From positions 248,001-312,000 of the IMG/VR virus record IMGVR_UViG_3300042923_000569: a stretch of DNA of 64,000 nucleotides. The stretch is one strand, 5' to 3'. The notes beneath the pieces are model-generated. The model was not told the origin of the DNA and did not search any database. It was given only the letters and a program-made list of their open reading frames with translations. Each line of letters opens with the position of its first letter. Position 1 is the first letter of the stretch. Positions 1 through 64,000 of this stretch are shown piece after piece. Both the position numbers and the translations under genes were made by a program.

Positions 1-2
1 GC

Positions 3-761
3 CTTAACAATATGGTTAAGTTTATTACACAGAGTTTCCATATTCTTTTTACTTTTATTATTAATAATCCCATGACCTTTATTAGAAGCAATAACTTCTT
101 TACAGATTCGGATATTAATTAATTCTTTTGCAAACTCATTAATAAATTCATCCCATGCAGTATTTGATACCTTAATTAAATCTTTGAAATTAAGTGGCAT
201 CAATGCCGGAATGAACTGATTATGTTTATTATAATGATTAATCAGTGCCAGCTTGTAATGTCCAGGCATAGTACTGAACTGAACAGATGGAATCTTGACA
301 CTATGTTCTTTCTTAAATCCATTCTTATTCAAGTCCAGATAAGTAAAATTACGTTTTACTTTATTAATTTCAGCATTTGGATTTAAGTTGTTCAACAAGC
401 ACCGATCATACCAGTACTTGAACTCTGCGTATTCAGCAAAAAGATTACTACGCATAAGGTTACATTTCTCACACAGCAAGTGCAAGTTATGCAACAAATT
501 AGAACCTTCAAGAGAGTTAAGTAAGTTATGGTCAACTGTCATACGACGACCATTACCAGCGAACATAATCATACCGTACATATCATGAAGTTTGAATACA
601 CCTTCTGAACCACAGCAATGACATTTTAATCCATCGCGTGTAGCTATATTGATAGCACGGATAGTACACGATTTAAATGGATAGTGTTTACGCATTTGTT
701 CTAAGTTGTTGAGAACAAACTCACCTTTAAACGTTACATTCTTTACTGATGAAATATTCAT
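3..761 (-). CDS. HNH endonuclease (3' end runs off the window)
   Basis: Not in the ORF track. Manual translation from ATG at 761: ...KCHCCG...MTVDHNLLNSLEGSNLLHNLHLLCEKCNLMRSNLFAE (CxxC plus HNH motif); paralog of 4917-5399. Confidence 0.8.
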   Translation of the reverse strand, partial: MNISSVKNVTFKGEFVLNNLEQMRKHYPFKSCTIRAINIATRDGLKCHCCGSEGVFKLHDMYGMIMFAGNGRRMTVDHNLLNSLEGSNLLHNLHLLCEKCNLMRSNLFAEYAEFKYWYDRCLLNNLNPNAEINKVKRNFTYLDLNKNGFKKEHSVKIPSVQFSTMPGHYKLALINHYNKHNQFIPALMPLNFKDLIKVSNTAWDEFINEFAKELINIRICKEVIASNKGHGIINNKSKKNMETLCNKLNHIVK

Positions 762-765
762 TTGA

Positions 766-1110
766 TTACCGTGCAATTAATTCATTTTCGTAAACAACCC
801 AGCGTGCACCGCTGAACACAATAGCTTCGGCTTTATCGATATCCGCAGTACTATGTGGAGAAGAAAGAATGCGAACACGATCACAAATCAAGCCGTTTGC
901 ATCGTCAACATAGGTGAATGATTCATCAAAGATTTTGCGGTACTTAGCATAATCTTCGTCACTAACATCATACACGAGATCATAAGACATACTATTAATA
1001 GTTTCAACTACATATGGAATGTCTGAACCTTGCATAAAAACTTTGTCTCCCACTTTAAATTTACTTGGTGGGATGATTGCAGTTTGCAGAAGATTTTTTA
1101 ATTGGCTCAT
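766..1110 (-). CDS. hypothetical protein
   Basis: 114 aa ORF; KFKVGDKV phage-type motif; downstream of promoter at 1142. Confidence 0.75.
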   Translation of the reverse strand: MSQLKNLLQTAIIPPSKFKVGDKVFMQGSDIPYVVETINSMSYDLVYDVSDEDYAKYRKIFDESFTYVDDANGLICDRVRILSSPHSTADIDKAEAIVFSGARWVVYENELIAR

Positions 1111-1141
1111 TTAAAATGTTCTCTCTTGATTTGATAAGGTT

Positions 1142-1175
1142 ATCATAACAAAAAGGGCTGACCGAAGTCAACCCC
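1142..1175 (-). promoter_or_regulatory. fused terminator / sigma70-type promoter, copy 1
   Basis: GGGTTGAC-TTCG-GTCAGCCC-TTTTT hairpin containing -35 TTGACT, then TG-T-TATGAT. Confidence 0.8.
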
Positions 1176-1180
1176 TTATA

Positions 1181-1510
1181 TTAATAATCTTTAAATTTTG
1201 AACGAATTTTTTTGGTTTTTCCAAAGCCAAACCATACCATGAAACACAGTAATACTACTACGGAGATTCCAACATAGTTAATAATTAGTGTGCCGCATAA
1301 TGTAAATTTGCTTGGGTCATTATCCATAGTAATATCAAGAATAATACACACGATATTAACGAAAGAAAATATATATAATGTTTCTTCTATACCGTCAAAA
1401 TACTTATTAACTAACTTATGACGGTTAAAGATTCTAAGTACTAATGCACATAATGCTACCAGTACTATTAAAGCCAGAACTAATGTTGAGATAAAGTTAT
1501 AGATTAACAT
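1181..1510 (-). CDS. hypothetical membrane protein
   Basis: Three hydrophobic segments; similar to 1517-1846. Confidence 0.75.
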   Translation of the reverse strand: MLIYNFISTLVLALIVLVALCALVLRIFNRHKLVNKYFDGIEETLYIFSFVNIVCIILDITMDNDPSKFTLCGTLIINYVGISVVVLLCFMVWFGFGKTKKIRSKFKDY

Positions 1511-1516
1511 ATAGCC

Positions 1517-1846
1517 TTATGTATCAATAAATGAAGAACGAAATTCTGATAATATCATACATATCAGAGCAATAACAATAATCGAACCAATTAACCCTAT
1601 GGTTGACATTAATATAACTGCTAATGCCGCATATTGATCAATTTTTGGTGGATGGTATATGTCAACTGAAAGACAAATCATAAGAAATAAGTTATATGCA
1701 CTTAAATAATACAATGAATCATCATTACCAGAAAGTTTCGCTACTAACTTTCTTTTATTAAAGAAGCATAGTATCCATAAAGAACATACATAAAATATGT
1801 ACACACCACCTACTACAGAAAAAATTGTGTTAATCCAAAAAATCAT
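1517..1846 (-). CDS. hypothetical membrane protein
   Basis: Three hydrophobic segments; shares FN..KLV.K...LY..S..N with 1181-1510. Confidence 0.75.
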   Translation of the reverse strand: MIFWINTIFSVVGGVYIFYVCSLWILCFFNKRKLVAKLSGNDDSLYYLSAYNLFLMICLSVDIYHPPKIDQYAALAVILMSTIGLIGSIIVIALICMILSEFRSSFIDT

Positions 1847-1890
1847 ATTAGAATCTCTAATGAAAAGGCACAGTTAAGTGCCTTATAGTT

Positions 1891-2289
1891 TTAGTTAATC
1901 TTGGTACATTTTGGTGATTCACCGGTACTGAGAATATCACCTTCAGAATTTTGGGTAATGATAGTAGCACTGTTACTTTTCTTGTAAACATAAATTACAG
2001 TACTACCAGTACTATCTTCATCGTAATAGATATACGTAGTGCGATCTTCATGGAAATCCACACCAGAAGTATCTAATGCAGTTTTCCATTTCTTACGTGG
2101 ATTTTTCTCATCAGTTACTTTAAAGTTGCATGAGAATACCGGGTAATTATCTTTCTTCTTTGGTTCAGAACGAAGGGTTTCGATCTGTTTGAAAGTATCT
2201 TGGGTGTTATCGTTAATCAGGCGTTCAAGTTCAGTTGCTTGAGCTGAGAAGGACAGGACCAGTACTGTAGCGATGATTAAACGTTTCAT
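1891..2289 (-). CDS. hypothetical exported protein
   Basis: Start reassigned to MKRLIIATVLVLSFSAQA (signal peptide). Confidence 0.75.
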   Translation of the reverse strand: MKRLIIATVLVLSFSAQATELERLINDNTQDTFKQIETLRSEPKKKDNYPVFSCNFKVTDEKNPRKKWKTALDTSGVDFHEDRTTYIYYDEDSTGSTVIYVYKKSNSATIITQNSEGDILSTGESPKCTKIN

Positions 2290-2320
2290 TTTATTTCTCT
2301 CAGTTAAATTTTGTCCCATC

Positions 2321-2352
2321 AGAATAGCAAAAAGGCTGACCGAAGTCAACCT
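2321..2352 (-). promoter_or_regulatory. fused terminator / sigma70-type promoter, copy 2
   Basis: GGTTGAC-TTCG-GTCAGCC-TTTTT; TTGACT-17-TATTCT with TG extension. Confidence 0.8.
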
Positions 2353-2359
2353 TTATTTT

Positions 2360-2632
2360 TTATTCTGGACGTTTAACGTCTTTAAGTTTTGGCATTTCCT
2401 GAATAACATTAAATGTGTGTAATACATTTTTACGGTCACGAGTACTGTAAACTTTACCTACATTACGTTCAAAAATGATCATTAGTGTGCTTTCTTGATT
2501 CACAAAAATACGATGTTCATCAGTACTGAATGATTTTACAAAACTGAAACCTTGGCTTTTTAAAAGTTCTCCAAGTTGTTGGATTGGAACCTGCTGCCAA
2601 CTCTTAATAACACTAAAATCTGTCTTTATCAT
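2360..2632 (-). CDS. hypothetical protein
   Basis: ORF in packed minus-strand run. Confidence 0.7.
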   Translation of the reverse strand: MIKTDFSVIKSWQQVPIQQLGELLKSQGFSFVKSFSTDEHRIFVNQESTLMIIFERNVGKVYSTRDRKNVLHTFNVIQEMPKLKDVKRPE

Positions 2633-2661
2633 GTTTAATTCCCTTTAACATATGATTTACT

Positions 2662-3003
2662 TTATTTATTCTCTATACAAATACTAACTAATTCATTTAG
2701 TTTAGTACCTTGTTCGTACAACGCTACTAATGTAAAAGCATTCTCTGAGCAGTACTTAACTGCATAACCAATATCAGTTCCAGATGCTTCAAGTTCTTTT
2801 AATGCTTTAACAATCATCTGATAGATCATAGTACTCGTCTTTTTAACAGGGTCGGGTTGAATCTTACCATTAGCACAATCAATAATATATCTACGCTTCT
2901 GAGATCTGGTTAATCCTGGTGGAATAGTAAAAGTTACACCATTGATATTATGTCTTAACCTGTCAAATTCTTCAGGGCTTACGATATATTCATTATCTTT
3001 CAT
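2662..3003 (-). CDS. hypothetical protein
   Basis: ORF, overlaps stop of upstream gene. Confidence 0.7.
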   Translation of the reverse strand: MKDNEYIVSPEEFDRLRHNINGVTFTIPPGLTRSQKRRYIIDCANGKIQPDPVKKTSTMIYQMIVKALKELEASGTDIGYAVKYCSENAFTLVALYEQGTKLNELVSICIENK

Positions 3004-3260
3004 AACTTACCTACAATTTCATAGTACTTCAATTTAATGAGATAGAGTAGATAGTCCGTATACTTTATCTCATTGTCATAACGTTTTCTTACTTTGACTT
3101 TATCACTTTCAGTAATACAAGTCTTCATTTCTTTTGCTCTGGACTTCTGCAAAACAGTTAGTTTGTTTGCTAGTTCTTTAATAGTACTGTTAACTTCATG
3201 GCGGTTTTTCCATGAAGCCCTGAGATGATTCAGTGTAGCATATGCACTGAATTTACTCAT
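3000..3260 (-). CDS. hypothetical protein
   Basis: ORF, ATGA-type coupling. Confidence 0.7.
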   Translation of the reverse strand: MSKFSAYATLNHLRASWKNRHEVNSTIKELANKLTVLQKSRAKEMKTCITESDKVKVRKRYDNEIKYTDYLLYLIKLKYYEIVGKL

Positions 3261-3445
3261 TGAATCCGGTCCTTTGAGATGTACTTCATTTTATAGTACA
3301 AACTATCTAACCGGACTTGATAGATAGCATCAGTAATAAACGCGTCAACTTCTTCTTCAGTATCCCCGGTTATTACAAGGTGAATGCTTTCGTATACATC
3401 TTCACCCGGCTTAAGACCTTTCAGTAATACATTGTATTCTAACAC
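3257..3445 (-). CDS. hypothetical protein
   Basis: ORF with GTG start and GGGGG SD. Confidence 0.65.
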   Translation of the reverse strand: MLEYNVLLKGLKPGEDVYESIHLVITGDTEEEVDAFITDAIYQVRLDSLYYKMKYISKDRIQ

Positions 3446-3461
3446 AATACACCCCCTAAAA

Positions 3462-3782
3462 TCAATTTAATTTTTCAATTAACCTTTTAAAATGATATAT
3501 AGTAAGACTAACCAAATACCAATAAGCAGAGATAAGAATTCCATATGATAAGTACATGTCTATTGATTGTTCATTTAAAATAAACATGTTTACAAGACTT
3601 AAATTACATAAAATAATTAAAGTATAAGATGCTGGTGTAGAAAGTCTCCACTTAGTTTTGTGTTCTTCTTCATTAAAGTTATTTTTAAAACTTAGTTGAA
3701 GAATCAAACTTAGAACTCCATAAAAGAACAGTACTGATGGAATTAAAGAAACTACAACAACTACAGCTAAAAGAATTTCCAT
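3462..3782 (-). CDS. hypothetical membrane protein
   Basis: Three hydrophobic segments. Confidence 0.7.
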   Translation of the reverse strand: MEILLAVVVVVSLIPSVLFFYGVLSLILQLSFKNNFNEEEHKTKWRLSTPASYTLIILCNLSLVNMFILNEQSIDMYLSYGILISAYWYLVSLTIYHFKRLIEKLN

Positions 3783-3831
3783 ATAAAATATCCTATAAAA
3801 AAAGGGAGATAATTATATCTCCCTATGATTG

Positions 3832-4152
3832 TTATTTTGTGTCTAACAGATGTACTTTATCTTTGTAGTAGTGATAGGTAGTCTTTGCATACAGACTTAC
3901 CATCCATAACCAGAACAGACATGACAGCCAGATTTGTAAATGTGTTACTACATTCCCGTATAGAAGCCCAATTAACCACAAACAAATTACGGTATATAGT
4001 GGGATTACATTAAAGAATGCAGATTTACTTTTCAGTAGTACCATCGTCGAACCCCACACAGATTTCCGTTGCTGGAATTTAGTGACGTACAAATCAAATA
4101 CGAAAAGTAAATTAACTAACGTAGTTCCGATAACGAATCCAAAAATGTTCAT
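3832..4152 (-). CDS. hypothetical membrane protein
   Basis: Three hydrophobic segments. Confidence 0.7.
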   Translation of the reverse strand: MNIFGFVIGTTLVNLLFVFDLYVTKFQQRKSVWGSTMVLLKSKSAFFNVIPLYTVICLWLIGLLYGNVVTHLQIWLSCLFWLWMVSLYAKTTYHYYKDKVHLLDTK

Positions 4153-4153
4153 A

Positions 4154-4936
4154 TTATACCTCTACGTTATTTTCCCACCACCATTCCAGCTCACCGCCGA
4201 ATGATTGGATTAGTTCTGGATTATCACGGATATATGATACTACAGTATCCCATCCAAGTACACCATCAGTGCCTAACTTTTCAATCCAGGGGCGAATCGT
4301 CCGGCGGCCTTGAATACACGCGTCACAACCATTTAGGGTTTCTTCACTGAAGTTAGGCACTACAGGGAACCCAGCGGCGACCAGTACTGCATTTGGTAAC
4401 AGAATTGGATAGCTGGAAACCTCACAGCTATAATCAAGCTGTTCAAAAATAAACTGCAAAACCGTTTGTTCTTCAGAAAACTTTTTAGTAAATGAAGTAA
4501 TAGGGATGTTTGGATTCAGTAACGGCCTGTAGTCATTTGCCTCGAATAATAACTCAATACCAACAGATTCAAAGTATTCATCAAAAGATATAATACCGTA
4601 ATTGTACTTATCACTTAAACTAATATGTTTATCAAGTTGTTCTTTATATCGTTCATAGATAAACGAACTATTATTTTTGTTTTCAATGAGATTGATACAG
4701 AATGAGCATTCAACTTTATGTTTAAACACTTCATCCCAATATTCAATTGGACGCGTATCGAATTTAAAAATACGTCCGTTCACAAAAATACGACCGGCAG
4801 CATCCAATTTACGATAAACTTTTAAGTCAATCAAATCAATCTGATCATTAGGTAAGCGGTGCCAGAGAATAGATTTAACTTCAGCAGAAGTTAGTTCGTT
4901 AATATTCTTTTCAGTACTAACACGCAACTCGATCAT
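4154..4936 (-). CDS. hypothetical protein, D(A/P)CxxGxR paralog family
   Basis: C-terminal GCDACIQGRRTIRPW motif shared with 5462 and 6873 ORFs. Confidence 0.8.
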   Translation of the reverse strand: MIELRVSTEKNINELTSAEVKSILWHRLPNDQIDLIDLKVYRKLDAAGRIFVNGRIFKFDTRPIEYWDEVFKHKVECSFCINLIENKNNSSFIYERYKEQLDKHISLSDKYNYGIISFDEYFESVGIELLFEANDYRPLLNPNIPITSFTKKFSEEQTVLQFIFEQLDYSCEVSSYPILLPNAVLVAAGFPVVPNFSEETLNGCDACIQGRRTIRPWIEKLGTDGVLGWDTVVSYIRDNPELIQSFGGELEWWWENNVEV

Positions 4937-5399
4937 CTTTTAAAACCTCAATTTTAATTAAGCTAGTACCAAAAGTTGGGTGTTTATACTCTTGATAAGC
5001 AACACCATTAAGATATACAACTTTAACTGGTACGGAAATAGTATTAGAACTAAGTTTTGGAATCCAATTATAATCTTCTTTGGTAATCTTTTTAGGCTTA
5101 GTGAGATATGAAAAGTTCTTAGAAACAGGTAAAGGATCACCGCTCCAGTACCATTCAAGAAATTCGGTTAGTTCAGCAAATAGATTACCACGGAGTTGAT
5201 TACAATCATAGCACATGGGAACAAGGTTGTCAATGCAATTAGAGCCGCCCAATGAACGAAGAAATACGTGATCCTGCGTATATCGTACTAAGGTTCCATC
5301 CAGCTTTTTAAAGTAGTTTTTACTTACTTGAGGAATACCACAGCACATACAGCAGACATTGCGGTATACTTGGTTCATATCTTGCATGAGAGACTCCAT
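4917..5399 (-). CDS. HNH endonuclease
   Basis: CMCCG...TQDHVFLRSLGGSNCIDNLVPMCYDCNQLRG. Confidence 0.85.
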   Translation of the reverse strand: MESLMQDMNQVYRNVCCMCCGIPQVSKNYFKKLDGTLVRYTQDHVFLRSLGGSNCIDNLVPMCYDCNQLRGNLFAELTEFLEWYWSGDPLPVSKNFSYLTKPKKITKEDYNWIPKLSSNTISVPVKVVYLNGVAYQEYKHPTFGTSLIKIEVLKDDRVAC

Positions 5400-5417
5400 T
5401 CATTGATTTAGGAGTCC

Positions 5418-5451
5418 ATTGTAGCTTAATCAGGGGGTCAGGTCAACCCCC
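5418..5451 (-). promoter_or_regulatory. sigma70-type promoter with -35 inside a GC hairpin
   Basis: GGGGG-TTGACC-TGACCCCC; TTGACC-17-TACAAT. Confidence 0.7.
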
Positions 5452-5461
5452 AGGGAGGATT

Positions 5462-6262
5462 TTATTGAACAGAAACGCTAGATAAAGTTGAAGATAGCCA
5501 GGTCAAATCGTCTTTAGCTTCTGATAGATTATTAACATTAGCTAAAATGTGACGGGCAACGAATTCATTCCACGAGTACCGTTGGTCACTACGCCCAGCC
5601 CATTTAACTACACGACGCCAGCCCAAACGACAAGGATCATATGAACGTAGTTCATTACTGGTCATAGTAGGTCGAACAGCACCAAAGATTTTAATTTGGT
5701 CTTCAGTACTGATAATAGTTGCACCAAATGCTTCAAACAAAGTAGCCTTAAAGCTAACCAATTGATTAAAAGAAGTTTCCGATACGTTCAAATTACTCCA
5801 GTTATCAATGAATGCTTTTGCTAGTTCAACATCTTTCTTTTCACCAACAATCTCACCGAAAAAATGTCCTCGGTGAGTAGAGTTAGAATTCGTAAGAAGA
5901 CTAATAATCTGTTCAGTACTCAATGCTTGTTGATAAATTAATGTAACAATATCGTATGAAATTTCTGCTTGACGTTCAATAAGATACTCAATACTTTCTT
6001 CATCTAATTTACAATTACTAATAACATAATCGATATATAGATTAGTTCCTTCAGTTAATATAAGGAAAATTTGTAAAGGGATTGGATCTTTTACCATTGA
6101 CAATACATCAGAATTATATAACTGCATATATTCATCTGGATTGAGATTTGATGCTAGTTGGATTAATTCTTCTACTGAAATTGGCGAATCTATTTTATAT
6201 TTTAAAAGGTTATTAGCAACTTCATTAATACTAACTTCCTTAGTAATATTTAAACGTGGCAT
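5462..6262 (-). CDS. hypothetical protein, DPCxxGxR paralog family
   Basis: SYDPCRLGWRRVVKW motif. Confidence 0.8.
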   Translation of the reverse strand: MPRLNITKEVSINEVANNLLKYKIDSPISVEELIQLASNLNPDEYMQLYNSDVLSMVKDPIPLQIFLILTEGTNLYIDYVISNCKLDEESIEYLIERQAEISYDIVTLIYQQALSTEQIISLLTNSNSTHRGHFFGEIVGEKKDVELAKAFIDNWSNLNVSETSFNQLVSFKATLFEAFGATIISTEDQIKIFGAVRPTMTSNELRSYDPCRLGWRRVVKWAGRSDQRYSWNEFVARHILANVNNLSEAKDDLTWLSSTLSSVSVQ

Positions 6263-17581: not shown

Positions 17582-17955
17582 TATAGCTCCAGACCGTAAA
17601 CAGTTGCTTTCATGCGTAGTTCATAGGGATCGAACGACTCTTTAATCCATCCTTCAGGCGATACCCATGCATCCCAAGTTTTATTTCGGCGTTTGTAGGT
17701 GGTAAAGTCGAAACGTACTACACTGTCATTCGTATATTCCAAGTTGTCAGCTTGTACAACACAGAATTTAGAATCGATTTTTGCTACGAATTTGCGGTTA
17801 GCAAAAATAATTTCACCATCACACTCAATTCCAATTAGATCTTCAAACTCTGAAACGCGGTTAACCGTACCGGTACGCATTGTTCCTTTATAAAGGAAAC
17901 ATACTTCTTCATTTTTATTCAATAACATAACATTGTACCTCAAAAAGTACTGCAT
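17581..17955 (-). CDS. hypothetical protein
   Basis: ORF; start may be the downstream MLLNK. Confidence 0.7.
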   Translation of the reverse strand: MQYFLRYNVMLLNKNEEVCFLYKGTMRTGTVNRVSEFEDLIGIECDGEIIFANRKFVAKIDSKFCVVQADNLEYTNDSVVRFDFTTYKRRNKTWDAWVSPEGWIKESFDPYELRMKATVYGLEL

Positions 17956-17982
17956 TTGGTTGCAGTACTTAATTTATAATCT

Positions 17983-25858: not shown

Positions 25859-25871
25859 TTATTTTCCTTAG

Positions 25872-25944
25872 TGGTCAGTACTGGATTTGAACCAGTGACT
25901 TCTACATTATGAGTGTAGCGTTCTACCAACTGAACTAACTGACC
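25872..25944 (-). tRNA. tRNA-Met(CAU), elongator-like
   Basis: CTACA-CTCATAA-TGTAG anticodon arm, full cloverleaf. Confidence 0.9.
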
Positions 25945-35183: not shown

Positions 35184-35189
35184 AATTTG

Positions 35190-35263
35190 TCCGTGTGGCA
35201 GGATTTGAACCTGCGACCCCTCCGCCCCAAACGGAGTACTCTACCAAACTGAGCCACACACGG
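35190..35263 (-). tRNA. tRNA-Pro(UGG), second copy
   Basis: CTCCG-TTTGGGG-CGGAG. Confidence 0.93.
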
Positions 35264-38464: not shown

Positions 38465-38686
38465 TTATAGCCTATTCATTGCTATAATATCAAAGTACTC
38501 ATTAAGATGAGTTACTTCTTTTAATTTATCTCGTACTTGATCCATATCAGTGAATTCAAATACCGATGTAATAATACATGAATCGGCAATATCAACCAAT
38601 TCAGTTCTGTAATAATCATCACTAAATTGATCAGTACTCTTTTTTTCATAATAAGAGTACTGATAACGTACAAAGTACTTAAACAT
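38465..38686 (-). CDS. hypothetical protein
   Basis: KYFVRY...DSCII, similar to adjacent gene (RYYVKY...DSVII). Confidence 0.7.
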   Translation of the reverse strand: MFKYFVRYQYSYYEKKSTDQFSDDYYRTELVDIADSCIITSVFEFTDMDQVRDKLKEVTHLNEYFDIIAMNRL

Positions 38687-56082: not shown

Positions 56083-56115
56083 CAGTACTGTACCAGAAAG
56101 ATTCAGTACTGTCAA
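56083..56115 (-). promoter_or_regulatory. sigma70-type promoter overlapped by two CAGTACTG palindromes
   Basis: TTGACA-GTACTGAATCTTTCTGG-TACAGT-ACTG. Confidence 0.7.
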
Positions 56116-57695: not shown

Positions 57696-57713
57696 GATTA
57701 TAGTACTCTTAAT

Positions 57714-57800: not shown

Positions 57801-57815
57801 ATTTAAATTTATAAT

Positions 57816-58471: not shown

Positions 58472-58656
58472 TCTTGAACTTCTAGTTCAATATTCATGAA
58501 ATCATCTTTAAGTACTTTACCATTAGTTAATTGATATACATTATTTCGTTTATCAATATAAAGTTCAATACCATGTTCAATGAAATGTGGGCGTCTGATA
58601 TAGAAGCCATTTTTAAAAGAGGTTTTTAAAAGTTGTTGGATTTCAGCAATAGTCAT
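58456..58656 (-). CDS. hypothetical protein
   Basis: IRRP.F...DWEII pattern. Confidence 0.65.
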   Translation of the reverse strand: MTIAEIQQLLKTSFKNGFYIRRPHFIEHGIELYIDKRNNVYQLTNGKVLKDDFMNIELEVQDWEII

Positions 58657-59139
58657 AGGTTCTCACTTGTTAACGAGATATGTTTCATCAATTTGGTTCT
58701 GAGAAATTATACGACCTATTCCTTCATGTATTGCGTTTGATACTACTAGTAGTACTATGACAACTAACAAACCAAAAAGTACAAAGCATGAATTTCTTTT
58801 TAAGAAATGAATCATAATTTATTTCTCTATTCTCAATTAAAAACTACAAGACTCCGTACTGACCGGAGATCTCTACTTGTAGAAGGTTTGTGTGGTTGGG
58901 GGTATCAACACAGTTAAGGCCAAATTCCCATTCTCGCCACGTCAAGATGTAAGTACTCTTACATTAGAGTTTGTTTTACCGCGATTAACTGGCTACATTC
59001 GAGGATAACCAATCCCCTAGCTACGATCAAGTAGCGTGGTTCTTTTTATTTCAAAAGGTGCACACCCTGTTAATTCAGGCTTTCTATCTTTACGGGATAG
59101 TTTTTTGAATTATCCTTACTGGATAACTGTGTGGGTATT

Positions 59140-59216
59140 TGGTGGTCCCAGCAGGACTCGAACCTGCGACCAAAGAATTATGAGTTCTCTGCTCTAACCA
59201 ACTGAGCTATAGGACC
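59140..59216 (-). tRNA. tRNA-Ile2(CAU) (lysidine type), or Met
   Basis: GGTCCTATAGCTCAGTTGGTTAGAGCAG..ACTCATAAT..TTGGTCGCAGG resembles ileX. Confidence 0.88.
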
Positions 59217-59374
59217 GAATTAATTATTTCTTTTCTTCGCCGCAGTACTCGCATTGTACTACTTCAGTTGGTTCACCACCTTCTTCACCAGTGATAAACT
59301 CTGATGGGATGGATTGTTTCTGGTAGTTATGTCCTGCACCAGATGCTGAACACTCATTATATGGGAATGACATA

Positions 59375-59587
59375 TTAACCTCTTTTACGACGCATTAATT
59401 TACGTAAAGCTAAAAATGGATTAGCTGGTTCTTTTACAGCTTCTTTTACTTTACCAAAAGATTCTTCTGAAAGTACTTTACTGTTTGTTTGAACGATTCC
59501 GGTAGTATTACAAGGATGACATTCATACATCATACCATCACCAGCATAATGCCAGCCATCACCATTACAAGAAGTACACTTATCCAT
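59375..59587 (-). CDS. small zinc-finger protein (CxxCxGxG)
   Basis: CTSCNGDG...CHPCNTTG. Confidence 0.7.
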   Translation of the reverse strand: MDKCTSCNGDGWHYAGDGMMYECHPCNTTGIVQTNSKVLSEESFGKVKEAVKEPANPFLALRKLMRRKRG

Positions 59588-59611
59588 GATAATCTCTCTT
59601 AATTAAAAGGG

Positions 59612-59721
59612 TGCATAAAGTAGGGTTCGAACCTACAAGGGAACCTCGCGGCTGCTCCCGAAGTCCTATCTTCGCTTTCGCTATTGTCGGACTCTCCGTT
59701 TACCAATTCCGGCATTTATGC
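59612..59721 (-). ncRNA. tRNA-Leu-like RNA with 22-nt anticodon loop
   Basis: Acceptor GCATAAA/TTTATGC-A, Leu-type D-arm, GAGTCC-[22 nt]-GGACTT, long variable arm, canonical T-arm. Confidence 0.8.
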
Positions 59722-59723
59722 AT

Positions 59724-59808
59724 TGGTGCGTCTGGTCGGACTCGAACCGACAAGCCATACGGCGGGGGATTTTAAATCCCCTGTGTTTACCAATTTCACC
59801 ACAGACGC
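59724..59808 (-). tRNA. tRNA-Leu(UAA), second copy
   Basis: GGGGA-TTTAAAA-TCCCC; CCA encoded. Confidence 0.95.
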
Positions 59809-59890
59809 TTTGTTCATCTTATATAAGTGTAGGCGTGTTCCGACGACCTCGTGTTAGTTGCTCGACATATTATGTCGCTACCTTTAGTGC

Positions 59891-59977
59891 GGCGGGTAGA
59901 GGGAATCGAACCCCCGTAGCGATGAAACGCATTGACTAAGCTAGCACGTCAATTGAGGTCGCCAACCTCATACCCGC
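59891..59977 (-). ncRNA. atypical tRNA-like RNA (long D stem, 11-nt anticodon loop)
   Basis: GCGGGTA/TACCCGC, GAGGT-TGGCG-ACCTC, ATTGAC-GTGCTAGCTTA-GTCAAT, GGGGG-TTCGATT-CCCTC. Confidence 0.75.
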
Positions 59978-60021
59978 ATCGATAATCGATGAACCACTAA
60001 AGCTCACTTATATTTTAAATT

Positions 60022-60097
60022 TGGTGCAGACAGCAGGATTCTAACCTGCGTCCATACATTCGGAATGTATGTGTTTTGACCCATAAACTATATCTGC
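60022..60097 (-). tRNA. tRNA-Arg(CCG)-like, atypical T-loop
   Basis: ATACA-TTCCGAA-TGTAT; T-loop TTAGAAT; CCA encoded. Confidence 0.7.
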
Positions 60098-60098
60098 T

Positions 60099-60173
60099 TG
60101 GTGCCCCTGACAGGATTCGAACCCGCGAATCACGGTTTTAGGGACCGCTGTTCTACCATAGAACGGCAGGGGC
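60099..60173 (-). tRNA. amber suppressor-like tRNA (CUA)
   Basis: GCGGT-CCCTAAA-ACCGT; full cloverleaf and CCA; C8 and C33 are non-canonical. Confidence 0.75.
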
Positions 60174-60193
60174 GTTGTTGTCTTGATGTATCT

Positions 60194-60223
60194 ATTATAC
60201 CACAGTTTTTCGAGCCGTTTCAA
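60194..60223 (-). promoter_or_regulatory. WTGAAAC-type phage promoter
   Basis: TTGAAACG...TGTGGTATAAT upstream of the CUA tRNA. Confidence 0.78.
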
Positions 60224-60257
60224 TTTTTTCTTCAATTTTCAACGGCTTGGGCAAAAA

Positions 60258-60527
60258 TCAATCAGTACTGTTACGTAGCTCAATGCAATGTGAGATATAA
60301 GTTCCTACCCACCAGCATAGTACTACAAGATTTACTACAGGTAAACTGCAAACTAAAATTATCGCTACAGTTAAACCCCAAATATTTCCGAAGCTATAAC
60401 CAAACTTCGGGTCAGGCTTACAATATCCTAATAAACAAAGAATATCGTATACTGCAAAACAAAGGAACATTACAATTCCAATTGTTAAACATAGCCAGAG
60501 ATACCCATACCAAATAGTTAATAACAT
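60258..60527 (-). CDS. hypothetical membrane protein
   Basis: Two TM segments. Confidence 0.7.
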   Translation of the reverse strand: MLLTIWYGYLWLCLTIGIVMFLCFAVYDILCLLGYCKPDPKFGYSFGNIWGLTVAIILVCSLPVVNLVVLCWWVGTYISHCIELRNSTD

Positions 60528-60535
60528 AGGTATCC

Positions 60536-60799
60536 TTAGTACTGGTAGCGTTCAACAAACTTGTTCTGACGAACATCGAACACATGATGCCAAACATCAG
60601 TTGGTTCAAGCTGAACTACATCGATAATGAAACCTTCTTCAGTATCGCCAGTCCATGTATCTTCGAACATATATGGACGATTAATCCACACACGAACGGT
60701 TCCATCTAAATCAATGGTTACATAACGAACATGTGAATGAACTTTAATAACTTGACCATTAATATTACAGTCAAGAAAAAGCTGTTCTTTCATTTTCAT
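60536..60799 (-). CDS. hypothetical protein (paralog of 60809-61072)
   Basis: C.ING...V...V...IDLDG.V..W...PYM. Confidence 0.75.
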   Translation of the reverse strand: MKMKEQLFLDCNINGQVIKVHSHVRYVTIDLDGTVRVWINRPYMFEDTWTGDTEEGFIIDVVQLEPTDVWHHVFDVRQNKFVERYQY

Positions 60800-60808
60800 A
60801 TCATAACC

Positions 60809-61072
60809 TTAATCGTAATACATGTCAACAAAAGAATGTGTGTCAACTGAATAAAGTTTTGTCCAGGTGTCACCATCTTCCATTGTTACCTGATACGCCC
60901 TGATGCTACTGGAACGGTCATGATACCAGTACCCTTCTGACATGTATGGAAGCTCAAGCCAGAATTCTACACGCCCTGCCATATCAATTGAAATGAATTT
61001 AACACCGAATGGAACTGAGAGTTCTGCACCATTGACGGTGCAAATCGTTTCGTTCTTTGCAAGTACTTTCAT
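60809..61072 (-). CDS. hypothetical protein (paralog of 60536-60799)
   Basis: Same motifs. Confidence 0.75.
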   Translation of the reverse strand: MKVLAKNETICTVNGAELSVPFGVKFISIDMAGRVEFWLELPYMSEGYWYHDRSSSIRAYQVTMEDGDTWTKLYSVDTHSFVDMYYD

Positions 61073-61203
61073 TTTATTTTTTACTCTTTCGTGTCGATGA
61101 AAAGATTATACTCTTAAAACATGGCACTAATCAAGGCTTTTTTTGATCTTTTTTAAGCTCGTGTACGGGCATCTGAGGGGTTTTTGTGGCTTCCCTGATG
61201 CGG

Positions 61204-61575
61204 TCAAGCATTGACTGCTTCGGCTTCTCTGGCTGCTTTTCGTTGCTCATAGCGTTTCGTCCATTCGTCGTGTTGGTAGGATACCCAAAAATATACCCAT
61301 GATATATTTTCAGGTGTCGCAAGCTTTTGCTGATTTAAATGATTAATTACAAATTGAATATCATCATCTTCATTCATATCATGAGCATCATATTCAAGTG
61401 CTTCATCATAATGTCGGTACTGAATGCTACCCATACGTTCTATTGGAGTATCATTACTATCTAGCCAGAAAAACTCTATCTCAACTATTTCATGCCATCT
61501 AATAGTGCCAAGTGAGTTACTATCTGGATATTCAACCCATTCTTGTGTTATATACTCCCATAAAAGTACTTTCAT
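61204..61575 (-). CDS. hypothetical protein
   Basis: ORF coupled to upstream gene. Confidence 0.7.
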   Translation of the reverse strand: MKVLLWEYITQEWVEYPDSNSLGTIRWHEIVEIEFFWLDSNDTPIERMGSIQYRHYDEALEYDAHDMNEDDDIQFVINHLNQQKLATPENISWVYFWVSYQHDEWTKRYEQRKAAREAEAVNA

Positions 61576-61931
61576 AGTATTAACTCATGGTATTTTTTAA
61601 TTTCAGCAAAATCATCAAAGTCAAAGTTTGCTGCTAAGAAATTTTTAGTACTTTCTTGAAAATGAGATTCTTCGGTATATTGATCTAATAGATCTAAATC
61701 CACTCTTCCACCACCGGTATAAATTAAAACTATATCATTCTGGTGAATGTACAATGTTCCTACATCTACAAAAAGGCATATATGTTTGTCAAGTATTGAC
61801 AGTTCGAAACCACCCTCGGTAATATTTGTGTCTTCTAAAAATGCCCAAGTTACCCACTTAATAGGTTTGCCGTACAGGAGTGTATAGTTTACATAAATGT
61901 CATTTAATGCTTTTAGTACTTGTTCTCTCAT
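61572..61931 (-). CDS. hypothetical protein, EExxFQxxT family
   Basis: TEESHFQESTKNF. Confidence 0.7.
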   Translation of the reverse strand: MREQVLKALNDIYVNYTLLYGKPIKWVTWAFLEDTNITEGGFELSILDKHICLFVDVGTLYIHQNDIVLIYTGGGRVDLDLLDQYTEESHFQESTKNFLAANFDFDDFAEIKKYHELIL

Positions 61932-61985
61932 TACACTATCCTACAAAAACAAAAAACCCAAGACTTAGCTTGGGTTAATTTAAAT

Positions 61986-62060
61986 TGGCATCCCGTATAG
62001 GAATCGAACCTATATCGATAGCTTAGAAGGCTACTGCTCTATCCATTGAGCTAACGGGAC
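61986..62060 (-). tRNA. tRNA-Arg(UCU)
   Basis: GTAGC-CTTCTAA-GCTAT; A20; CCA encoded. Confidence 0.95.
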
Positions 62061-62092
62061 ATAGTACTACTTTGTAGTACTTTTATTTATTC

Positions 62093-62434
62093 TTATTCAG
62101 TTTCGTTAAATTCACTGAATGTCATTACTGCACGTTGGTTTTTACCATTAAAATAATAGGTACAGGCAACATCACCTGATTCTTCACCATGACGAATACA
62201 CGTCAACAGAATTCCCGGTAAAGATAAGCTTAATTTAGTTAAATCTTCTATTTCATCATACCAAACAGCATCACTATCAGTGCAAATCTGGTTGTTACGG
62301 ATAAAGAATGATTCACCCGAAACTACATCTTTAAGTGCAGCTTGAATATAATTCAAATCAACTTTAGCATCTTTAATACCTGGTGGTAATGTATGTAGTT
62401 TAGCAGTAATTGAAAATGATGATGAGTAACCCAT
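62093..62434 (-). CDS. conserved phage hypothetical protein
   Basis: MGYSS.F...WYD...DL..LS...P...GEESGD...YYFNGK. Confidence 0.8.
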   Translation of the reverse strand: MGYSSSFSITAKLHTLPPGIKDAKVDLNYIQAALKDVVSGESFFIRNNQICTDSDAVWYDEIEDLTKLSLSLPGILLTCIRHGEESGDVACTYYFNGKNQRAVMTFSEFNETE

Positions 62435-62436
62435 TA

Positions 62437-62631
62437 TTAAACCTCTGTTGTTTCCTGAACTTCTAGTTCAAGTACATTATCTAAATCTTCAGTACTACAA
62501 GTATCAAGCCATTCCTGACGTTCTTCAGCACTTTCGAAAATAAAAATACTATCCTTGTATTCGAAGCCATATGGAACACCATATTCAGCTTCTAAATCAT
62601 CACGTAGATTAACCGAATCCTTCGTAATCAT
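62437..62631 (-). CDS. hypothetical acidic protein
   Basis: ORF with AAGGA SD. Confidence 0.7.
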   Translation of the reverse strand: MITKDSVNLRDDLEAEYGVPYGFEYKDSIFIFESAEERQEWLDTCSTEDLDNVLELEVQETTEV

Positions 62632-62643
62632 ATTGTATCCTTG

Positions 62644-63105
62644 TTAAAGTTGAAGTTCCATGAACTTCTGCATAAGTAAATCATAATCATCAATTACAGT
62701 ACTAGTTTTAGTTTCTGATACTTGTTTGTAATCATTTAAACTAATAATGTAAGTCCAACCTGTACAATAACCATATCCACTAAATTCAGCAATGATATGG
62801 TCGTTTGATTGAATTCCTTCATTCGTTGAATATGCTTTCGCAAAAGAATGAACGAATCCAAGAGATTCACTACCCCGAAGAATAGATGATACATGTTCAC
62901 GAGCATTAATTGTTGAACGAATAAAAGAATACCATTGATTTCTTTTATCAAAGCCATAGTCATAAAGATCAATTTCCTGTGCAGGAGAATGATCTTGAAA
63001 AACCAGAGTACAAATATCTTTTGTTTTTTCTGTTTTCGCACTAAACAATTTAAAAGTCAGCGTAGACATGTTATTTCTCTGTTTATTGGCACCCGAAGGT
63101 GCCAA
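62644..63105 (-). CDS. hypothetical protein
   Basis: ORF; start probably MSTLT. Confidence 0.7.
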   Translation of the reverse strand: MAPSGANKQRNNMSTLTFKLFSAKTEKTKDICTLVFQDHSPAQEIDLYDYGFDKRNQWYSFIRSTINAREHVSSILRGSESLGFVHSFAKAYSTNEGIQSNDHIIAEFSGYGYCTGWTYIISLNDYKQVSETKTSTVIDDYDLLMQKFMELQL

Positions 63106-63111
63106 TCATTA

Positions 63112-63489
63112 TTATTTAGGTAAAGAGTTTAAGTACTTTTTACCTGCTTGGATAAGTTTCTTCTTTTTGATCTTAAAAGAAGTACTGTCCTGACCACCAA
63201 ACATTGTGCAGTTCGCGAGAATTTCAGCCCACGCTGTCATATAAAGAGTTGGTGCAAGAGGATCTGTCCATATGGTTTCAAAGTCCTCAGACTTCGCCAT
63301 ATGGAAGGTCATATCCTTGCGGATCAATTCTTGAATTACAGTTTCTTCAGGAAAGAGATGTTTCCATGTATCAGCACTAACATTAGCGTGATCAGGGAAA
63401 TGTACTTTACCCTCTTCATCTTCTACACGACATAATGGTTTACCACAGTCATGATATTCTTGGTAACGAAGTACAATATCATTTGGCAA
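63112..63489 (-). CDS. putative HD-domain-like protein (start uncertain)
   Basis: YHDCGKP...HFPDHA.VSA resembles the HD-domain HDxGK...H..H motifs. Confidence 0.5.
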   Translation of the reverse strand: MPNDIVLRYQEYHDCGKPLCRVEDEEGKVHFPDHANVSADTWKHLFPEETVIQELIRKDMTFHMAKSEDFETIWTDPLAPTLYMTAWAEILANCTMFGGQDSTSFKIKKKKLIQAGKKYLNSLPK

Positions 63490-63674
63490 AATCTTATCTT
63501 TGATTTTGCTATATACTTCAAGTAATACAGGGTCGCCCTATCCAGTGTCAAGTTCAGAAATTAGTACTTTGTACTGTTCCTGAACCATAAGACCATGTGC
63601 ATGTACACTTAGTCCTTTCATCTGTTCGGTTGTCTGCATTAAGTGTAGTAAGTCTTCGAAAGTGTTTGGATAAA

Positions 63675-63998
63675 TCATTTAGCACCTCCGTTGAAGAGTT
63701 GATACTTACGGAAGATACTACGCTGTTCAGCAGTTACTGGAGCACTTGCAAAGGCGGTGAAGCCATAATCCCAATCAGGTTCGAAGAACTGAACAAAGTC
63801 AATCCCTAATCCCTGGAGTTCATCATATGCTTTTTGTAACTTATGTTTATTCTTACACGAAATGACAATTAGAGAACTAGTCTCAGTACTGTTATTTTCG
63901 AAGGCCAAGCCGCTTTCATAAGCTGCGTGGTTAGATTGTACTACTATTTGCTCGATTGGAAGATCCGTTCTTACAAATACATAAATCCAAGTTTTTTC
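63675..63998 (-). CDS. peptidyl-tRNA hydrolase Pth2-like protein (5' end beyond the window)
   Basis: Frame extends to the edge: WIYVFVRTDL...VQSNHAA...LIVIS...FFEPD...TAFASAP. Confidence 0.75.
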   Translation of the reverse strand, partial: EKTWIYVFVRTDLPIEQIVVQSNHAAYESGLAFENNSTETSSLIVISCKNKHKLQKAYDELQGLGIDFVQFFEPDWDYGFTAFASAPVTAEQRSIFRKYQLFNGGAK

Positions 63999-64000
63999 AT

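What the first reader, a model, noticed from the sequence alone, without database searches (positions are those of the whole stretch)
1..64000. Strong over-representation of the palindrome AGTACT (ScaI site)
Seen: I count 15 copies in the first 3.8 kb (270, 413, 847, 1437, 1461, 1999, 2008, 2261, 2441, 2522, 2751, 2830, 3023, 3183, 3730) where about 1-2 are expected from base composition. The density looks similar throughout, in different reading frames and between genes. Phages usually avoid palindromes. Inference: a genome-wide signal such as a DNA-binding, packaging or recombination site, or a modification target for self recognition.
Basis: partly seen in the sequence, partly recalled or inferred. 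Interest (0 to 1): 0.7.

Follow-up and report, generated by a model that had tools for sequence, protein, structure and literature searches.

The report
AGTACT word saturating jumbo phage genome
The six-letter palindrome AGTACT is the commonest hexamer in this 358-kb jumbo phage and its whole clade, held there by selection or drive in all reading frames, although the same genomes have deleted some twenty other restriction-site palindromes; what reads it is unknown.

Summary
The window holds 197 AGTACT copies against 18 expected. The whole 357,873-bp phage genome holds 991 against 121, and AGTACT is its commonest hexamer.

The excess survives codon and k-mer correction:
- Synonymous codon shuffling gives 220 copies in coding sequence against 803 observed (z about 45).
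- Markov models estimated with the copies masked give 95-176.

The word lies in all three frames and between genes, spread almost at random. It has raised Ser-Thr and Val-Leu dipeptides in the proteome. Synonymous positions inside it evolve more slowly than the same codons elsewhere.

All 14 genomes counted in the RaK2/121Q/GAP32/BF clade carry 735-1,356 copies. The sister Vibrio phage and four other jumbo phages do not. E. coli K-12 has one copy per 11.6 kb against one per 361 bp here. The same clade has zero GCGC and lacks 16-23 palindromic hexamers.

Best reading, by inference: a maintained double-stranded DNA recognition word that works as a phage "self" tag. The reader protein was not found. 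A clade-specific adenine methyltransferase and a SmaI-fold nuclease co-occur with the trait, but nothing links them to AGTACT. I found no report of this in the searchable literature.

The parts
1..64000 (.). 197 dispersed copies of AGTACT, one per 325 bp and 21-31 per 8 kb. By frame: 69 AGT|ACT, 54 nnA|GTA|CTn, 24 nAG|TAC|Tnn, and 50 outside called genes. The flanks favour C or A at -1 and disfavour G (hAGTACTd).
   Evidence: All positions are listed. Frames and bins come, flanks, and shuffles.
270..3735 (.).
   Evidence: All are exact matches.
17946..17969 (-). Two copies 18 bp apart that form the arms of a perfect inverted repeat, AAGTACTGCA-loop-TGCAGTACTT. On the - strand a T run follows, so this looks like an intrinsic terminator built from the self-complementary word.
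   Evidence: Sequence printed. There is a small excess of copies 0-30 bp after stop codons.
56084..56110 (.). Two copies of the 8-bp palindrome CAGTACTG, 21 bp apart, outside called genes.
   Evidence: Pairs 18-23 bp apart are in excess in five genomes.
38633..38679 (.). Three copies within 47 bp (38633, 38656, 38674), inside a small - strand ORF.
25877..25882 (.). A copy inside a tRNA-Met gene (25871-25944). A second copy at 35235 lies inside tRNA-Pro (35189-35263).

Best explanation
AGTACT is a maintained, genome-wide recognition word on double-stranded DNA. It arose once on the stem of the RaK2/121Q/GAP32/BF clade of jumbo phages.

Shown:
- A force acting on the DNA word itself creates and preserves copies everywhere. 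It acts whatever the reading frame, the gene, or the position within a gene.
- The force is strong enough to change amino-acid pairs and to slow synonymous change.

Inferred:
- Because the word is a perfect palindrome with symmetric flank preferences, it is most likely read by a symmetric (dimeric) phage-encoded protein.
- Each copy would give a small, independent benefit.
- The likeliest benefit is a sequence-based 'self' tag. The word is 32 times denser on phage DNA than on E. coli DNA.
- It would be the positive counterpart of the clade's negative signature, which is the total loss of GCGC and about twenty six-cutter sites. Together the two signatures could tell phage DNA from host DNA while host DNA is attacked or shut off, without wholesale base replacement.
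- A subset of copies has been built into regulatory DNA: paired copies flank the -35 and -10 elements of early promoters, there is a 20-bp tandem array, and some copies form terminator stems.

The reader protein is not identified.
For: Excess beyond composition, dinucleotides, codon usage and masked k-mers.

Uniqueness: AGTACT has z = 43.6 in the synonymous shuffle. The next enriched word that does not overlap it has z = 11.

Frames and density: copies lie in all three frames and outside called genes, at 3.6 per kb outside genes against 2.6 per kb inside.

Proteome distortion:
- Ser-Thr dipeptide observed/expected is 1.36-1.75, while the Thr-Ser control is about 1.0.
- Val-Leu is 1.2-1.5.
- This holds in five rich genomes. 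The Vibrio sister phage gives 1.03 and 0.95.
- 56% of Ser-Thr pairs are AGT-ACT, against 16% expected.

Conservation:
- Among codons whose amino acid is conserved, those inside AGTACT are identical between genomes in 63-89% of cases, against 40-79% for the same codons elsewhere.
- Odds ratios are 1.9-4.0, with p down to 4e-12, in three genome pairs.
- 49% of sites are conserved between this genome and GAP32, against 26% of all hexamers.

Distribution: spacing is close to Poisson, the largest gap is 2.2 kb, chi2/df among genes is 0.93, and there is no preferred position within genes.

Clade pattern:
- 14 of 14 clade genomes counted hold 735-1,356 copies; 5 of 5 other phages hold 15-81.
- On the major capsid protein (MCP) tree the rich genomes form one clade, with support 99/97.
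- E. coli K-12 holds 400 copies in 4.64 Mb.

Symmetric flanks:
- C is enriched and G depleted at -1, mirrored at +1.
- The palindromic 8-mers CAGTACTG and AAGTACTT exceed the expectation for independent flanks.

Regulatory use: early promoters of the form AGTACTTGC-N11-GAGTACTwTATAAT, and a fourfold 20-bp array.

The palindrome purge co-occurs with the trait and is absent from the sister phage.
Against: - No reader protein was found.
- The trait arose once, so the gene co-occurrences (Dam-family methyltransferase and SmaI-fold nuclease, each 14 of 14 against 0 of 5) amount to a single evolutionary event. At least 64 genes share that pattern.
- Other phages that carry 45-50% identical homologs of the methyltransferase have no AGTACT excess.
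- Between BF and pEa_SNUABM_47 (99.4% identical), sites differ at about the neutral rate: 36 of about 1,072, against 3.2% expected. Gains roughly equal losses. Per-site selection is therefore weak or slow to act, and a biased-conversion drive would give the same pattern.
- The 'self tag' function is inference only. Nothing here shows binding, modification or protection.
Confidence: 0.4

Rival explanations
1. Selfish or neutral drive. A phage enzyme, such as a site-directed mismatch or nicking activity acting on heteroduplex DNA in this highly recombining phage type, converts near-sites into AGTACT. The word then accumulates with no benefit to the phage, in the way that very-short-patch repair or GC-biased conversion shifts sequence composition.
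For: - The enrichment is uniform, close to Poisson, blind to frame and position, and proceeds even at the cost of amino-acid changes.
- Turnover between 99.4%-identical genomes runs at about the neutral rate, with gains roughly equal to losses.
- The genomes carry many HNH endonuclease genes and a restriction-endonuclease-fold nuclease.
Against: - No single-step neighbour is strongly depleted, and most 5-of-6 matches are themselves 1.6-2.3 times enriched.
- No Vsr, MutS or MutL homolog was found. MutS and MutL were searched directly.
- The word has been built into promoters, an array and terminator stems, which suggests that something reads it.
- Density is about twice as high in the early-gene region.
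Confidence: 0.2
2. Target of a phage DNA methyltransferase. Hemimethylated or fully methylated AGTACT would then serve replication-linked functions such as strand discrimination for repair, sequestration, or timing of transcription or packaging, as GATC does with Dam, MutH and SeqA in E. coli.
For: - The target is palindromic.
- A PF05869 Dam-family adenine methyltransferase (genome 206,850-207,398, 182 aa) is present in all 14 rich genomes and in none of the 5 poor ones.
- A six-base target would need enrichment to reach a useful density.
- Pairs spaced about two helical turns apart are in excess.
Against: - The methyltransferase's specificity is unknown. Its family has more than 7,800 close homologs, and five other phages with 45-50% identical copies hold only 0-9 AGTACT.
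- No MutS or MutL was found.
- Spacing is not consistently more regular than random, with a coefficient of variation of 0.93-1.12.
- The C5 methyltransferase is missing from BF, and the RaK2 paper's bisulfite data show CpG methylation (PMC3622015).
Confidence: 0.15
3. Operator of a global phage regulator. AGTACT would be the binding site of a repressor or activator of the early promoters, and the roughly 950 other copies would be weakly selected decoy or buffering sites.
For: - About 11 early sigma-70-like promoters at genome 226-235 kb carry one copy just upstream of the -35 element and one just upstream of the -10 element, 20 bp apart.
- A fourfold 20-bp array lies at genome 239,076-239,140.
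- Density peaks in that region at 46-57 copies per 10 kb.
Against: - These promoters hold only about 2-4% of the copies.
- About 80% of the copies lie inside genes, with no preferred position.
- A regulator does not explain an eightfold genome-wide excess that alters protein sequences.
Confidence: 0.1
4. By-product of codon usage, amino-acid content or shorter k-mer bias, or an RNA-level signal (AGUACU) in the almost uniformly one-stranded transcriptome.
For: - A maximal-order Markov model gives an observed/expected ratio of only 1.15.
- 94% of genes lie on one strand.
Against: - The Markov result is circular. Masked models give 15-30 against 197 observed.
- The synonymous shuffle gives z of about 45.
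- Copies outside called genes are denser than copies inside them.
- Only 64 of 4,096 hexamers are palindromes, and the flank preferences are symmetric too.
- The sister phage has similar biology and no excess.
Confidence: 0.03

Closest known systems
Chi (GCTGGTGG) in E. coli and in phages that rely on host RecBCD
   Same: A short word strongly over-represented genome-wide, in coding DNA regardless of frame. It marks DNA as 'own' to a processive enzyme.
   Different: Chi is asymmetric and works in one orientation only. AGTACT is a perfect palindrome. True Chi is separately enriched in these phages, at 33 copies against about 2.5 expected, so that role is already filled.
DNA uptake sequences (USS/DUS) of Haemophilus and Neisseria (from general knowledge)
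   Same: Hundreds to thousands of copies in all frames, maintained by a drive or by selection on the DNA word. They distort peptide content and often occur as inverted pairs that form terminators.
   Different: They are 9-12 bp, asymmetric, and belong to naturally competent bacteria, where an uptake receptor reads them. Here the word is a 6-bp palindrome in a lytic phage and its reader is unknown.
GATC with Dam, MutH and SeqA in enterobacteria
   Same: A palindromic word read on double-stranded DNA. An orphan adenine methyltransferase is present in the genome. The function would depend on site density.
   Different: GATC is not strongly over-represented. No MutS or MutL is present here. The methyltransferase's target is unknown, and the phage's own GATC is slightly depleted at 0.73.
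Base-replacement self-marking in large phages: T4 hydroxymethylcytosine, and SPO1 hydroxymethyluracil with the abundant TF1 protein that prefers phage DNA and shuts off early promoters (from general knowledge)
   Same: A means of telling phage DNA from host DNA genome-wide. The mark also sits at early promoters.
   Different: Those marks are chemical replacements of a base. Here the mark would be a sequence word. No HU or TF1 homolog was found.
Restriction-site (palindrome) avoidance in phages (PMC6286503)
   Same: The same genomes show it to an extreme degree: 23 palindromic hexamers and GCGC have zero copies.
   Different: AGTACT goes the opposite way, at eight times its expected count.
Orphan AGTACT-directed methyltransferase of the giant virus mollivirus sibericum (PMC7253447)
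   Same: A viral genome in which AGTACT is a viral methylation target with no partner nuclease.
   Different: No enrichment of the site is reported there. It is a eukaryotic virus. No homology was tested here.

Membership tests
Restriction-site avoidance | The palindromic site is under-represented relative to composition. | tested here: not met
   AGTACT is 8.2 times over-represented. Other palindromes in the same genome do meet the criterion.
Chi-like recombination hotspot | An asymmetric word that acts in one orientation. | tested here: not met
   AGTACT is its own reverse complement. GCTGGTGG itself is enriched separately.
ScaI-type restriction-modification system | A nuclease of the RE_ScaI family (PF09569). 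| tested here: not met
   No match at E <= 10 in this genome or five relatives.
ScaI-type restriction-modification system | A cognate methyltransferase acting on AGTACT. | not testable with these tools
   - No PF01555 (N4/N6) or PF02086 match was found.
- One PF00145 C5 methyltransferase is present; CpG methylation is reported for RaK2.
- One PF05869 methyltransferase of unknown specificity is present.
- Deciding this needs methylome data.
Methyl-directed repair or sequestration (Dam/MutH/SeqA type) | A palindromic target plus an orphan adenine methyltransferase. | tested here: inconclusive
   The word is a palindrome and a PF05869 methyltransferase is present in all rich genomes. Its specificity is unknown, and homologs elsewhere come without the enrichment.
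Methyl-directed repair or sequestration (Dam/MutH/SeqA type) | MutS and MutL partners encoded by the phage. | tested here: not met
   PF00488 and PF01119 are absent from this genome and from GAP32, UE-S1, BF and RaK2. Use of host MutS and MutL is not excluded.
SlmA-binding site (12-bp GTGAGTACTCAC; consensus recalled from memory) | AGTACT core flanked by GTG...CAC, with G at -1 and C at +1. | tested here: not met
   G at -1 is the rarest flank (0.43 times background). GAGTACTC occurs only 4 times among the 991 copies.
Dispersed repeat element (REP or MITE-like) | Conserved sequence extends beyond the core word. | tested here: not met
   Positions -10 to -2 are close to background. Only position -1 shows a preference.
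Promoter or operator element | A fixed position relative to transcription signals. | tested here: inconclusive
   This holds for about 11 early promoters and one array. It does not hold for the roughly 95% of copies that lie inside genes with no preferred position.

The most novel reading that the evidence does not exclude
These phages tell their own DNA from host DNA purely by sequence, using a two-sided code.
- Negative side: words that phage-encoded nucleases cut have been erased from the phage genome. Examples are the targets of the clade-specific SmaI-fold enzyme, and GCGC and about twenty six-cutter sites.
- Positive side: the tag AGTACT is planted every 360 bp or so. An as yet unknown phage protein reads it to shield, organise or license phage DNA.
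This would be a modification-free self/non-self system in a virus.
Probability: 0.2. Interest if true: 0.9.

Novelty: new variant of a known kind. Interest (0 to 1): 0.72.

Why it matters
Genome-wide over-represented words such as Chi, uptake sequences and KOPS have each led to a piece of DNA-handling machinery. Here a restriction-site palindrome is the commonest hexamer in a whole clade of 350-kb phages. Members of that clade infect Escherichia, Klebsiella, Salmonella, Cronobacter, Serratia, Yersinia, Erwinia and Pectobacterium, and two are recorded on Xanthomonas. Some are being considered for phage therapy and biocontrol.

The same genomes have purged other palindromes completely. The pressure for AGTACT is strong enough to reshape the proteome. 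This points to an unknown protein-DNA system in poorly understood phages.

It gives a simple, testable handle: ScaI digestion, methylome calls, pull-downs and recoding experiments. It also bears on practical matters such as restriction mapping, cloning, synthetic recoding, and k-mer based recognition of this clade in metagenomes.

Tried and rejected
Leads tested and set aside:
Rejected. It is absent from BF, which holds 1,072 copies. The RaK2 paper's bisulfite data show CpG methylation.
2. **PF05869 methyltransferase as a specific link.** Weakened. Its co-occurrence with the trait is a single evolutionary event. Homologs in Lactococcus, Staphylococcus, Faecalibacterium and Acinetobacter phages come with only 0-9 copies. 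The family is very large.
3. **The 246-aa clade-specific protein as an AGTACT enzyme.**
   - It has a type II restriction endonuclease fold: SmaI at E 2.7e-7, and ThaI at Z 8.0.
   - It does not match RE_ScaI or the ThaI family by sequence.
   - A nuclease for AGTACT would select against the site. It more likely cuts a purged GC-rich site.
   - Foldseek against the PDB gave nothing significant.
4. **Other candidate readers.** No HU/TF1-like protein and no MutS or MutL. Pfam and PHROGs scans of 50 clade-specific proteins and 7 genes beside the methyltransferase found no clear DNA-binding domain. Hits included NrdD/G, thymidine kinase, TelA, Nudix, HNH, ClpS and a zinc ribbon.
5. **Very-short-patch-type conversion from one neighbouring word.** No neighbour is strongly depleted.
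6. **Regular spacing.** Not consistent across genomes.
7. **Positional bias within genes.** None.
8. **Chi-like role.** True Chi is enriched instead.
9. **SlmA sites.** The flanks are wrong.
10. **Sequencing runs.** 20 of the 24 listed runs hold at least part of the stretch, all as assembled contigs from soil, plant, insect-gut and food samples. No raw reads are available, so there is no modification or RNA evidence.
11. **Literature.** No paper in the library pairs AGTACT with these phages or with 'jumbo'.
12. **Complex prediction.** Not run, because it gives no verdict for DNA partners and no candidate reader justified it.

Full report
**1. What the window is**

The window is bases 248,001-312,000 of a 357,873-bp virus record with direct terminal repeats. 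It is 35.7% G+C. Almost all genes lie on the minus strand: 120 of the 121 I called in the window, and 444 of 473 in the genome. The window also holds 26 tRNA genes.

DNA similarity to deposited phages is limited to tRNAs and short stretches. The major capsid protein is 98-99% identical to those of Cronobacter phage GAP32, Pectobacterium phage CBB and Serratia phage BF. It is 89% identical to Escherichia phages 121Q and PBECO4, and 79% to Klebsiella phage RaK2. Genome-wide, 66% of the DNA aligns to GAP32 at 76% identity.

This is therefore a new member of the RaK2-like jumbo phages. The public runs that hold it come from soil, phyllosphere, plant, insect-gut and food samples.

**2.

- The window has 197 copies. 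Dinucleotide shuffles give 17.65 +/- 4.47.
- The genome has 991 copies against 120.6 expected from composition. AGTACT is the commonest of all hexamers.

A maximal-order Markov model predicts 171 copies in the window. That happens only because the pentamers AGTAC (297) and GTACT (277) consist mostly of AGTACT itself. When the copies are masked before the shorter words are counted, orders 1 to 4 predict 15-30 in the window and 95-176 in the genome.

Shuffling synonymous codons within each gene keeps every protein and each gene's codon usage. It gives 220 +/- 13 copies in coding DNA against 803 observed. Even that baseline is inflated, because the word contributes to the usage of AGT, ACT, GTA and TAC.

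Across all 4,096 hexamers, AGTACT stands alone at z = 43.6. The next five words all overlap it. The next independent word reaches z = 11.

**3. Anatomy**

*Frames.* In the genome, 402 copies read AGT|ACT (Ser-Thr), 277 read nnA|GTA|CTn (Val-Leu) and 123 read nAG|TAC|Tnn. A further 189 lie outside my called genes, where density is higher: 3.6 per kb against 2.6 per kb.

*Flanks.*
- Only position -1, and by symmetry +1, matters. C is favoured 1.7-3.1 times and G is depleted to about 0.4 times. Positions further out are close to background.
- The palindromic 8-mers CAGTACTG (116) and AAGTACTT (173) exceed what independent flanks would give.

*Spacing.*
- Spacing is close to random. The coefficient of variation of the gaps is 0.93-1.12.
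- The largest gap is 2.2 kb.
- Dispersion among genes gives chi2/df of 0.93.
- There is no preferred position inside genes. A slight excess appears just after stop codons.

*Large-scale density.* Density is about twice as high at genome 200-250 kb, the region of many small early genes.

*Close pairs.* Pairs 18-23 bp apart are in modest excess in all five genomes examined. They include:
- about 11 early sigma-70-like promoters of the form AGTACTTGC-N11-GAGTACTwTATAAT at genome 226-235 kb;
- a fourfold 20-bp tandem array at genome 239,076-239,140;
- hairpins in which two copies form the stem, for example window 17,946-17,969.

**4. The word is maintained, not a relic**

*The proteome is distorted.*
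- In five rich genomes the Ser-Thr dipeptide is 1.36-1.75 times its expectation, while the Thr-Ser control is about 1.0.
- Val-Leu is 1.2-1.5 times its expectation, while Leu-Val is about 0.95.
- The sister Vibrio phage shows 1.03 and 0.95.
- 56% of Ser-Thr pairs are written AGT-ACT, against 16% expected.

*Sites are conserved.*
- Between this genome and GAP32, 49% of sites are conserved, against 26% of all hexamers and 16-31% of control palindromes.
- I restricted the comparison to codons whose amino acid is conserved. Codons inside AGTACT are identical in 63-89% of cases, against 40-79% for the same codons elsewhere.
- Odds ratios are 1.9-4.0, with p down to 4e-12, in three genome pairs and all three frames.

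*Recent turnover looks neutral.* Between BF and pEa_SNUABM_47 (99.4% identical), 36 of about 1,072 sites differ. That is about the neutral rate, and gains roughly balance losses. The force per site is therefore weak and acts over long times, as expected for about 1,000 interchangeable copies. This test cannot separate selection from a conversion-type drive.

**5. Distribution across phages**

| Group | Phages | AGTACT copies | Reversed control TCATGA |
|---|---|---|---|
| Rich | this genome, GAP32, CBB, XbC2, BF, pEa_SNUABM_47, fHe-Yen9-04, Kaldavass, Hallingskeid, Munch, 121Q, UE-S1, XaC1, RaK2 | 735-1,356 | 130-200 |
| Poor | Vibrio phage 2.275.O, PA5oct, Phosso, Atu_ph07, Stenotrophomonas CM1 | 81, 15, 15, 25, 36 | 40-132 |

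On a capsid-protein tree the ten rich genomes included form one clade (support 99/97). The Vibrio phage is its sister and the other three are outgroups. The trait therefore arose once. It follows phage ancestry across many host genera.

E. coli K-12 has only 400 copies in 4.64 Mb, against 1,147 for the control. The phage is thus 32 times denser than that host.

**6. The opposite signature in the same genomes**

- This genome has no GCGC at all (363 expected) and no copy of 23 palindromic hexamers. Among them are GGATCC, CTGCAG, CCATGG, GAGCTC, GTCGAC and GGTACC.
- GAP32, UE-S1, BF and RaK2 share this pattern, with some lineage-specific additions such as CTTAAG, GATATC and ACGCGT.
- The sister Vibrio phage lacks it entirely: no palindromic hexamer is absent, and it has 561 GCGC.

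The purge and the AGTACT excess therefore arose on the same branch.

**7. Search for the partner protein**

I found 64 genes in this genome that are shared with GAP32, BF, UE-S1 and RaK2 but missing from the Vibrio sister. Two are DNA enzymes.

*A 182-aa PF05869 Dam-family adenine methyltransferase at genome 206,850-207,398.*
- It is present in 13 of 13 other rich genomes and 0 of 5 poor ones.
- The family has thousands of members.
- Five unrelated phages with 45-50% identical copies hold only 0-9 AGTACT.

*A 246-aa protein at genome 202,349-203,089, about 4 kb from the methyltransferase.* The same spacing and orientation recur in GAP32, RaK2 and UE-S1.
- It has the same phyletic pattern and no Pfam match.
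- Its homologs occur only within this clade.
- A confident model (pLDDT 91) matches type II restriction endonucleases:
  - SmaI in AlphaFold DB Swiss-Prot at E 2.7e-7 and TM 0.54;
  - ThaI, NhoI, SfiI, HinP1I, MspI, NaeI, SwaI, DpnI and EcoRV at Z 5.5-8.0 in a full PDB scan, where 16 of the top 17 hits are such enzymes.
- It keeps an invariant D...Q-x-S-V-K and E-R-R pattern.
- It does not match the ScaI or ThaI sequence families.

A nuclease directed at AGTACT would select against the site. I therefore read this enzyme as more likely aimed at a purged GC-rich word. CCCGGG has 0-1 copies and GCGC has none. That reading is an inference.

Other leads:
- The C5 methyltransferase at genome 313,967-314,830 is missing from BF. 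The RaK2 paper's bisulfite data show CpG methylation (PMC3622015).
- No HU-like, MutS or MutL gene is present.

**8. Interpretation**

*Shown.* A DNA-level force specific to this hexamer has acted throughout one phage clade. It is independent of frame and gene, strong enough to alter proteins, and still operating.

*Inferred.* The perfect symmetry of the word and of its flank preferences points to recognition on double-stranded DNA by a symmetric protein. Near-random placement points to many small, independent contributions rather than a few special sites.

The most economical function is a sequence-based self tag that complements the purge of cuttable words. The 32-fold contrast with host DNA, the co-origin with the purge, and the use of the word at early promoters all fit this. 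None of them proves it.

I put about 0.4 on a selected recognition word or self tag. The alternatives are:

| Alternative | Probability |
|---|---|
| Non-adaptive conversion drive | 0.2 |
| Methylation target with replication-linked use | 0.15 |
| Primarily regulatory operator | 0.1 |
| Compositional or RNA-level cause | about 0.03 |

**9. Novelty**

No paper in the searchable library mentions AGTACT together with these phages or with jumbo phages. Neither the CBB paper nor the RaK2 paper notes it.

The nearest known phenomena are Chi, uptake sequences and GATC/Dam systems. This differs from them in being a six-base palindrome, in a lytic virus, with an unknown reader, in genomes that otherwise avoid palindromes to an extreme degree.

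Noticed in passing
Whole genome, including window 1-64000: Extreme palindrome purge. GCGC has 0 copies (363 expected in the genome; 0 against 44-64 in the window). 23 of the 64 palindromic hexamers have 0 copies, including GGATCC, CTGCAG, CCATGG, GAGCTC, GTCGAC, GGTACC and CGTACG. GAP32, UE-S1, BF and RaK2 share this; the sister Vibrio phage does not. Some sites are purged only in certain lineages: CTTAAG, GATATC, ACGCGT and GCTAGC.
   Followed up: partly
Outside the window: genome 202,349-203,089 (-), L132:2349-3089: A clade-specific 246-aa protein with a confident type II restriction endonuclease fold (SmaI-like, E 2.7e-7; ThaI Z 8.0). It has no Pfam match and no obvious cognate cytosine methyltransferase. 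It lies about 4 kb from the Dam-family methyltransferase. It may be a phage nuclease aimed at host DNA at a word the phage has erased.
   Followed up: partly
Outside the window: genome 206,850-207,398 (-), L132:6850-7398: A 182-aa PF05869 Dam-family adenine methyltransferase, found in every AGTACT-rich genome tested and in none of the poor ones. Its specificity is unknown.
   Followed up: partly
Whole genome; one copy in the window at about 60,309 (genome 308,309); cluster at genome 219-237 kb: The E. coli Chi octamer GCTGGTGG is about 13 times enriched: 33 copies on the two strands against about 2.5 expected. Relatives hold 18-32 copies and the Vibrio phage holds 15. Ten copies in one orientation cluster in the early region.
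   Followed up: partly
Outside the window: genome 226,690-235,030 (- strand): About 11 near-identical early sigma-70-like promoters with an A-rich upstream element. Their form is AAAAACATTATCAAA-AGTACTTGC-N11-GAGTACTwTATAAT, with one AGTACT just upstream of the -35 element and one just upstream of the -10 element.
   Followed up: partly
Outside the window: genome 239,076-239,140: Four tandem 20-bp units, each carrying AACAGTACTAAGA, in DNA outside called genes. The arrangement looks like iterons or an operator array.
   Followed up: no
Window 24,667-62,060: 26 tRNA genes on the minus strand, scattered among small ORFs. They include three tRNA-Met and two each of tRNA-Lys, tRNA-Pro and tRNA-Ser.
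   Followed up: no
Whole genome, coding DNA: TATTTA and TAAATA are the hexamers most depleted inside genes (z -15.6 and -12.3), and among the most conserved between genomes. This fits a T4-like late promoter word that is kept out of coding sequence. Shine-Dalgarno-like words such as AGGAGG and GGAGGT are also depleted inside genes.
   Followed up: no
Window 4,917-5,399 (-): A 160-aa HNH endonuclease gene that is among the genes shared by the rich clade and missing from the Vibrio sister phage. Paralogs may blur this call.
   Followed up: no
All AGTACT copies, flank position -1/+1: G at -1 (and C at +1) is specifically depleted, to about 0.4 times background. GAGTACTC occurs only 4 times among 991 copies. 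The cause is unknown. Those flanks would be needed to build the host SlmA-binding palindrome (consensus recalled from memory).
   Followed up: no
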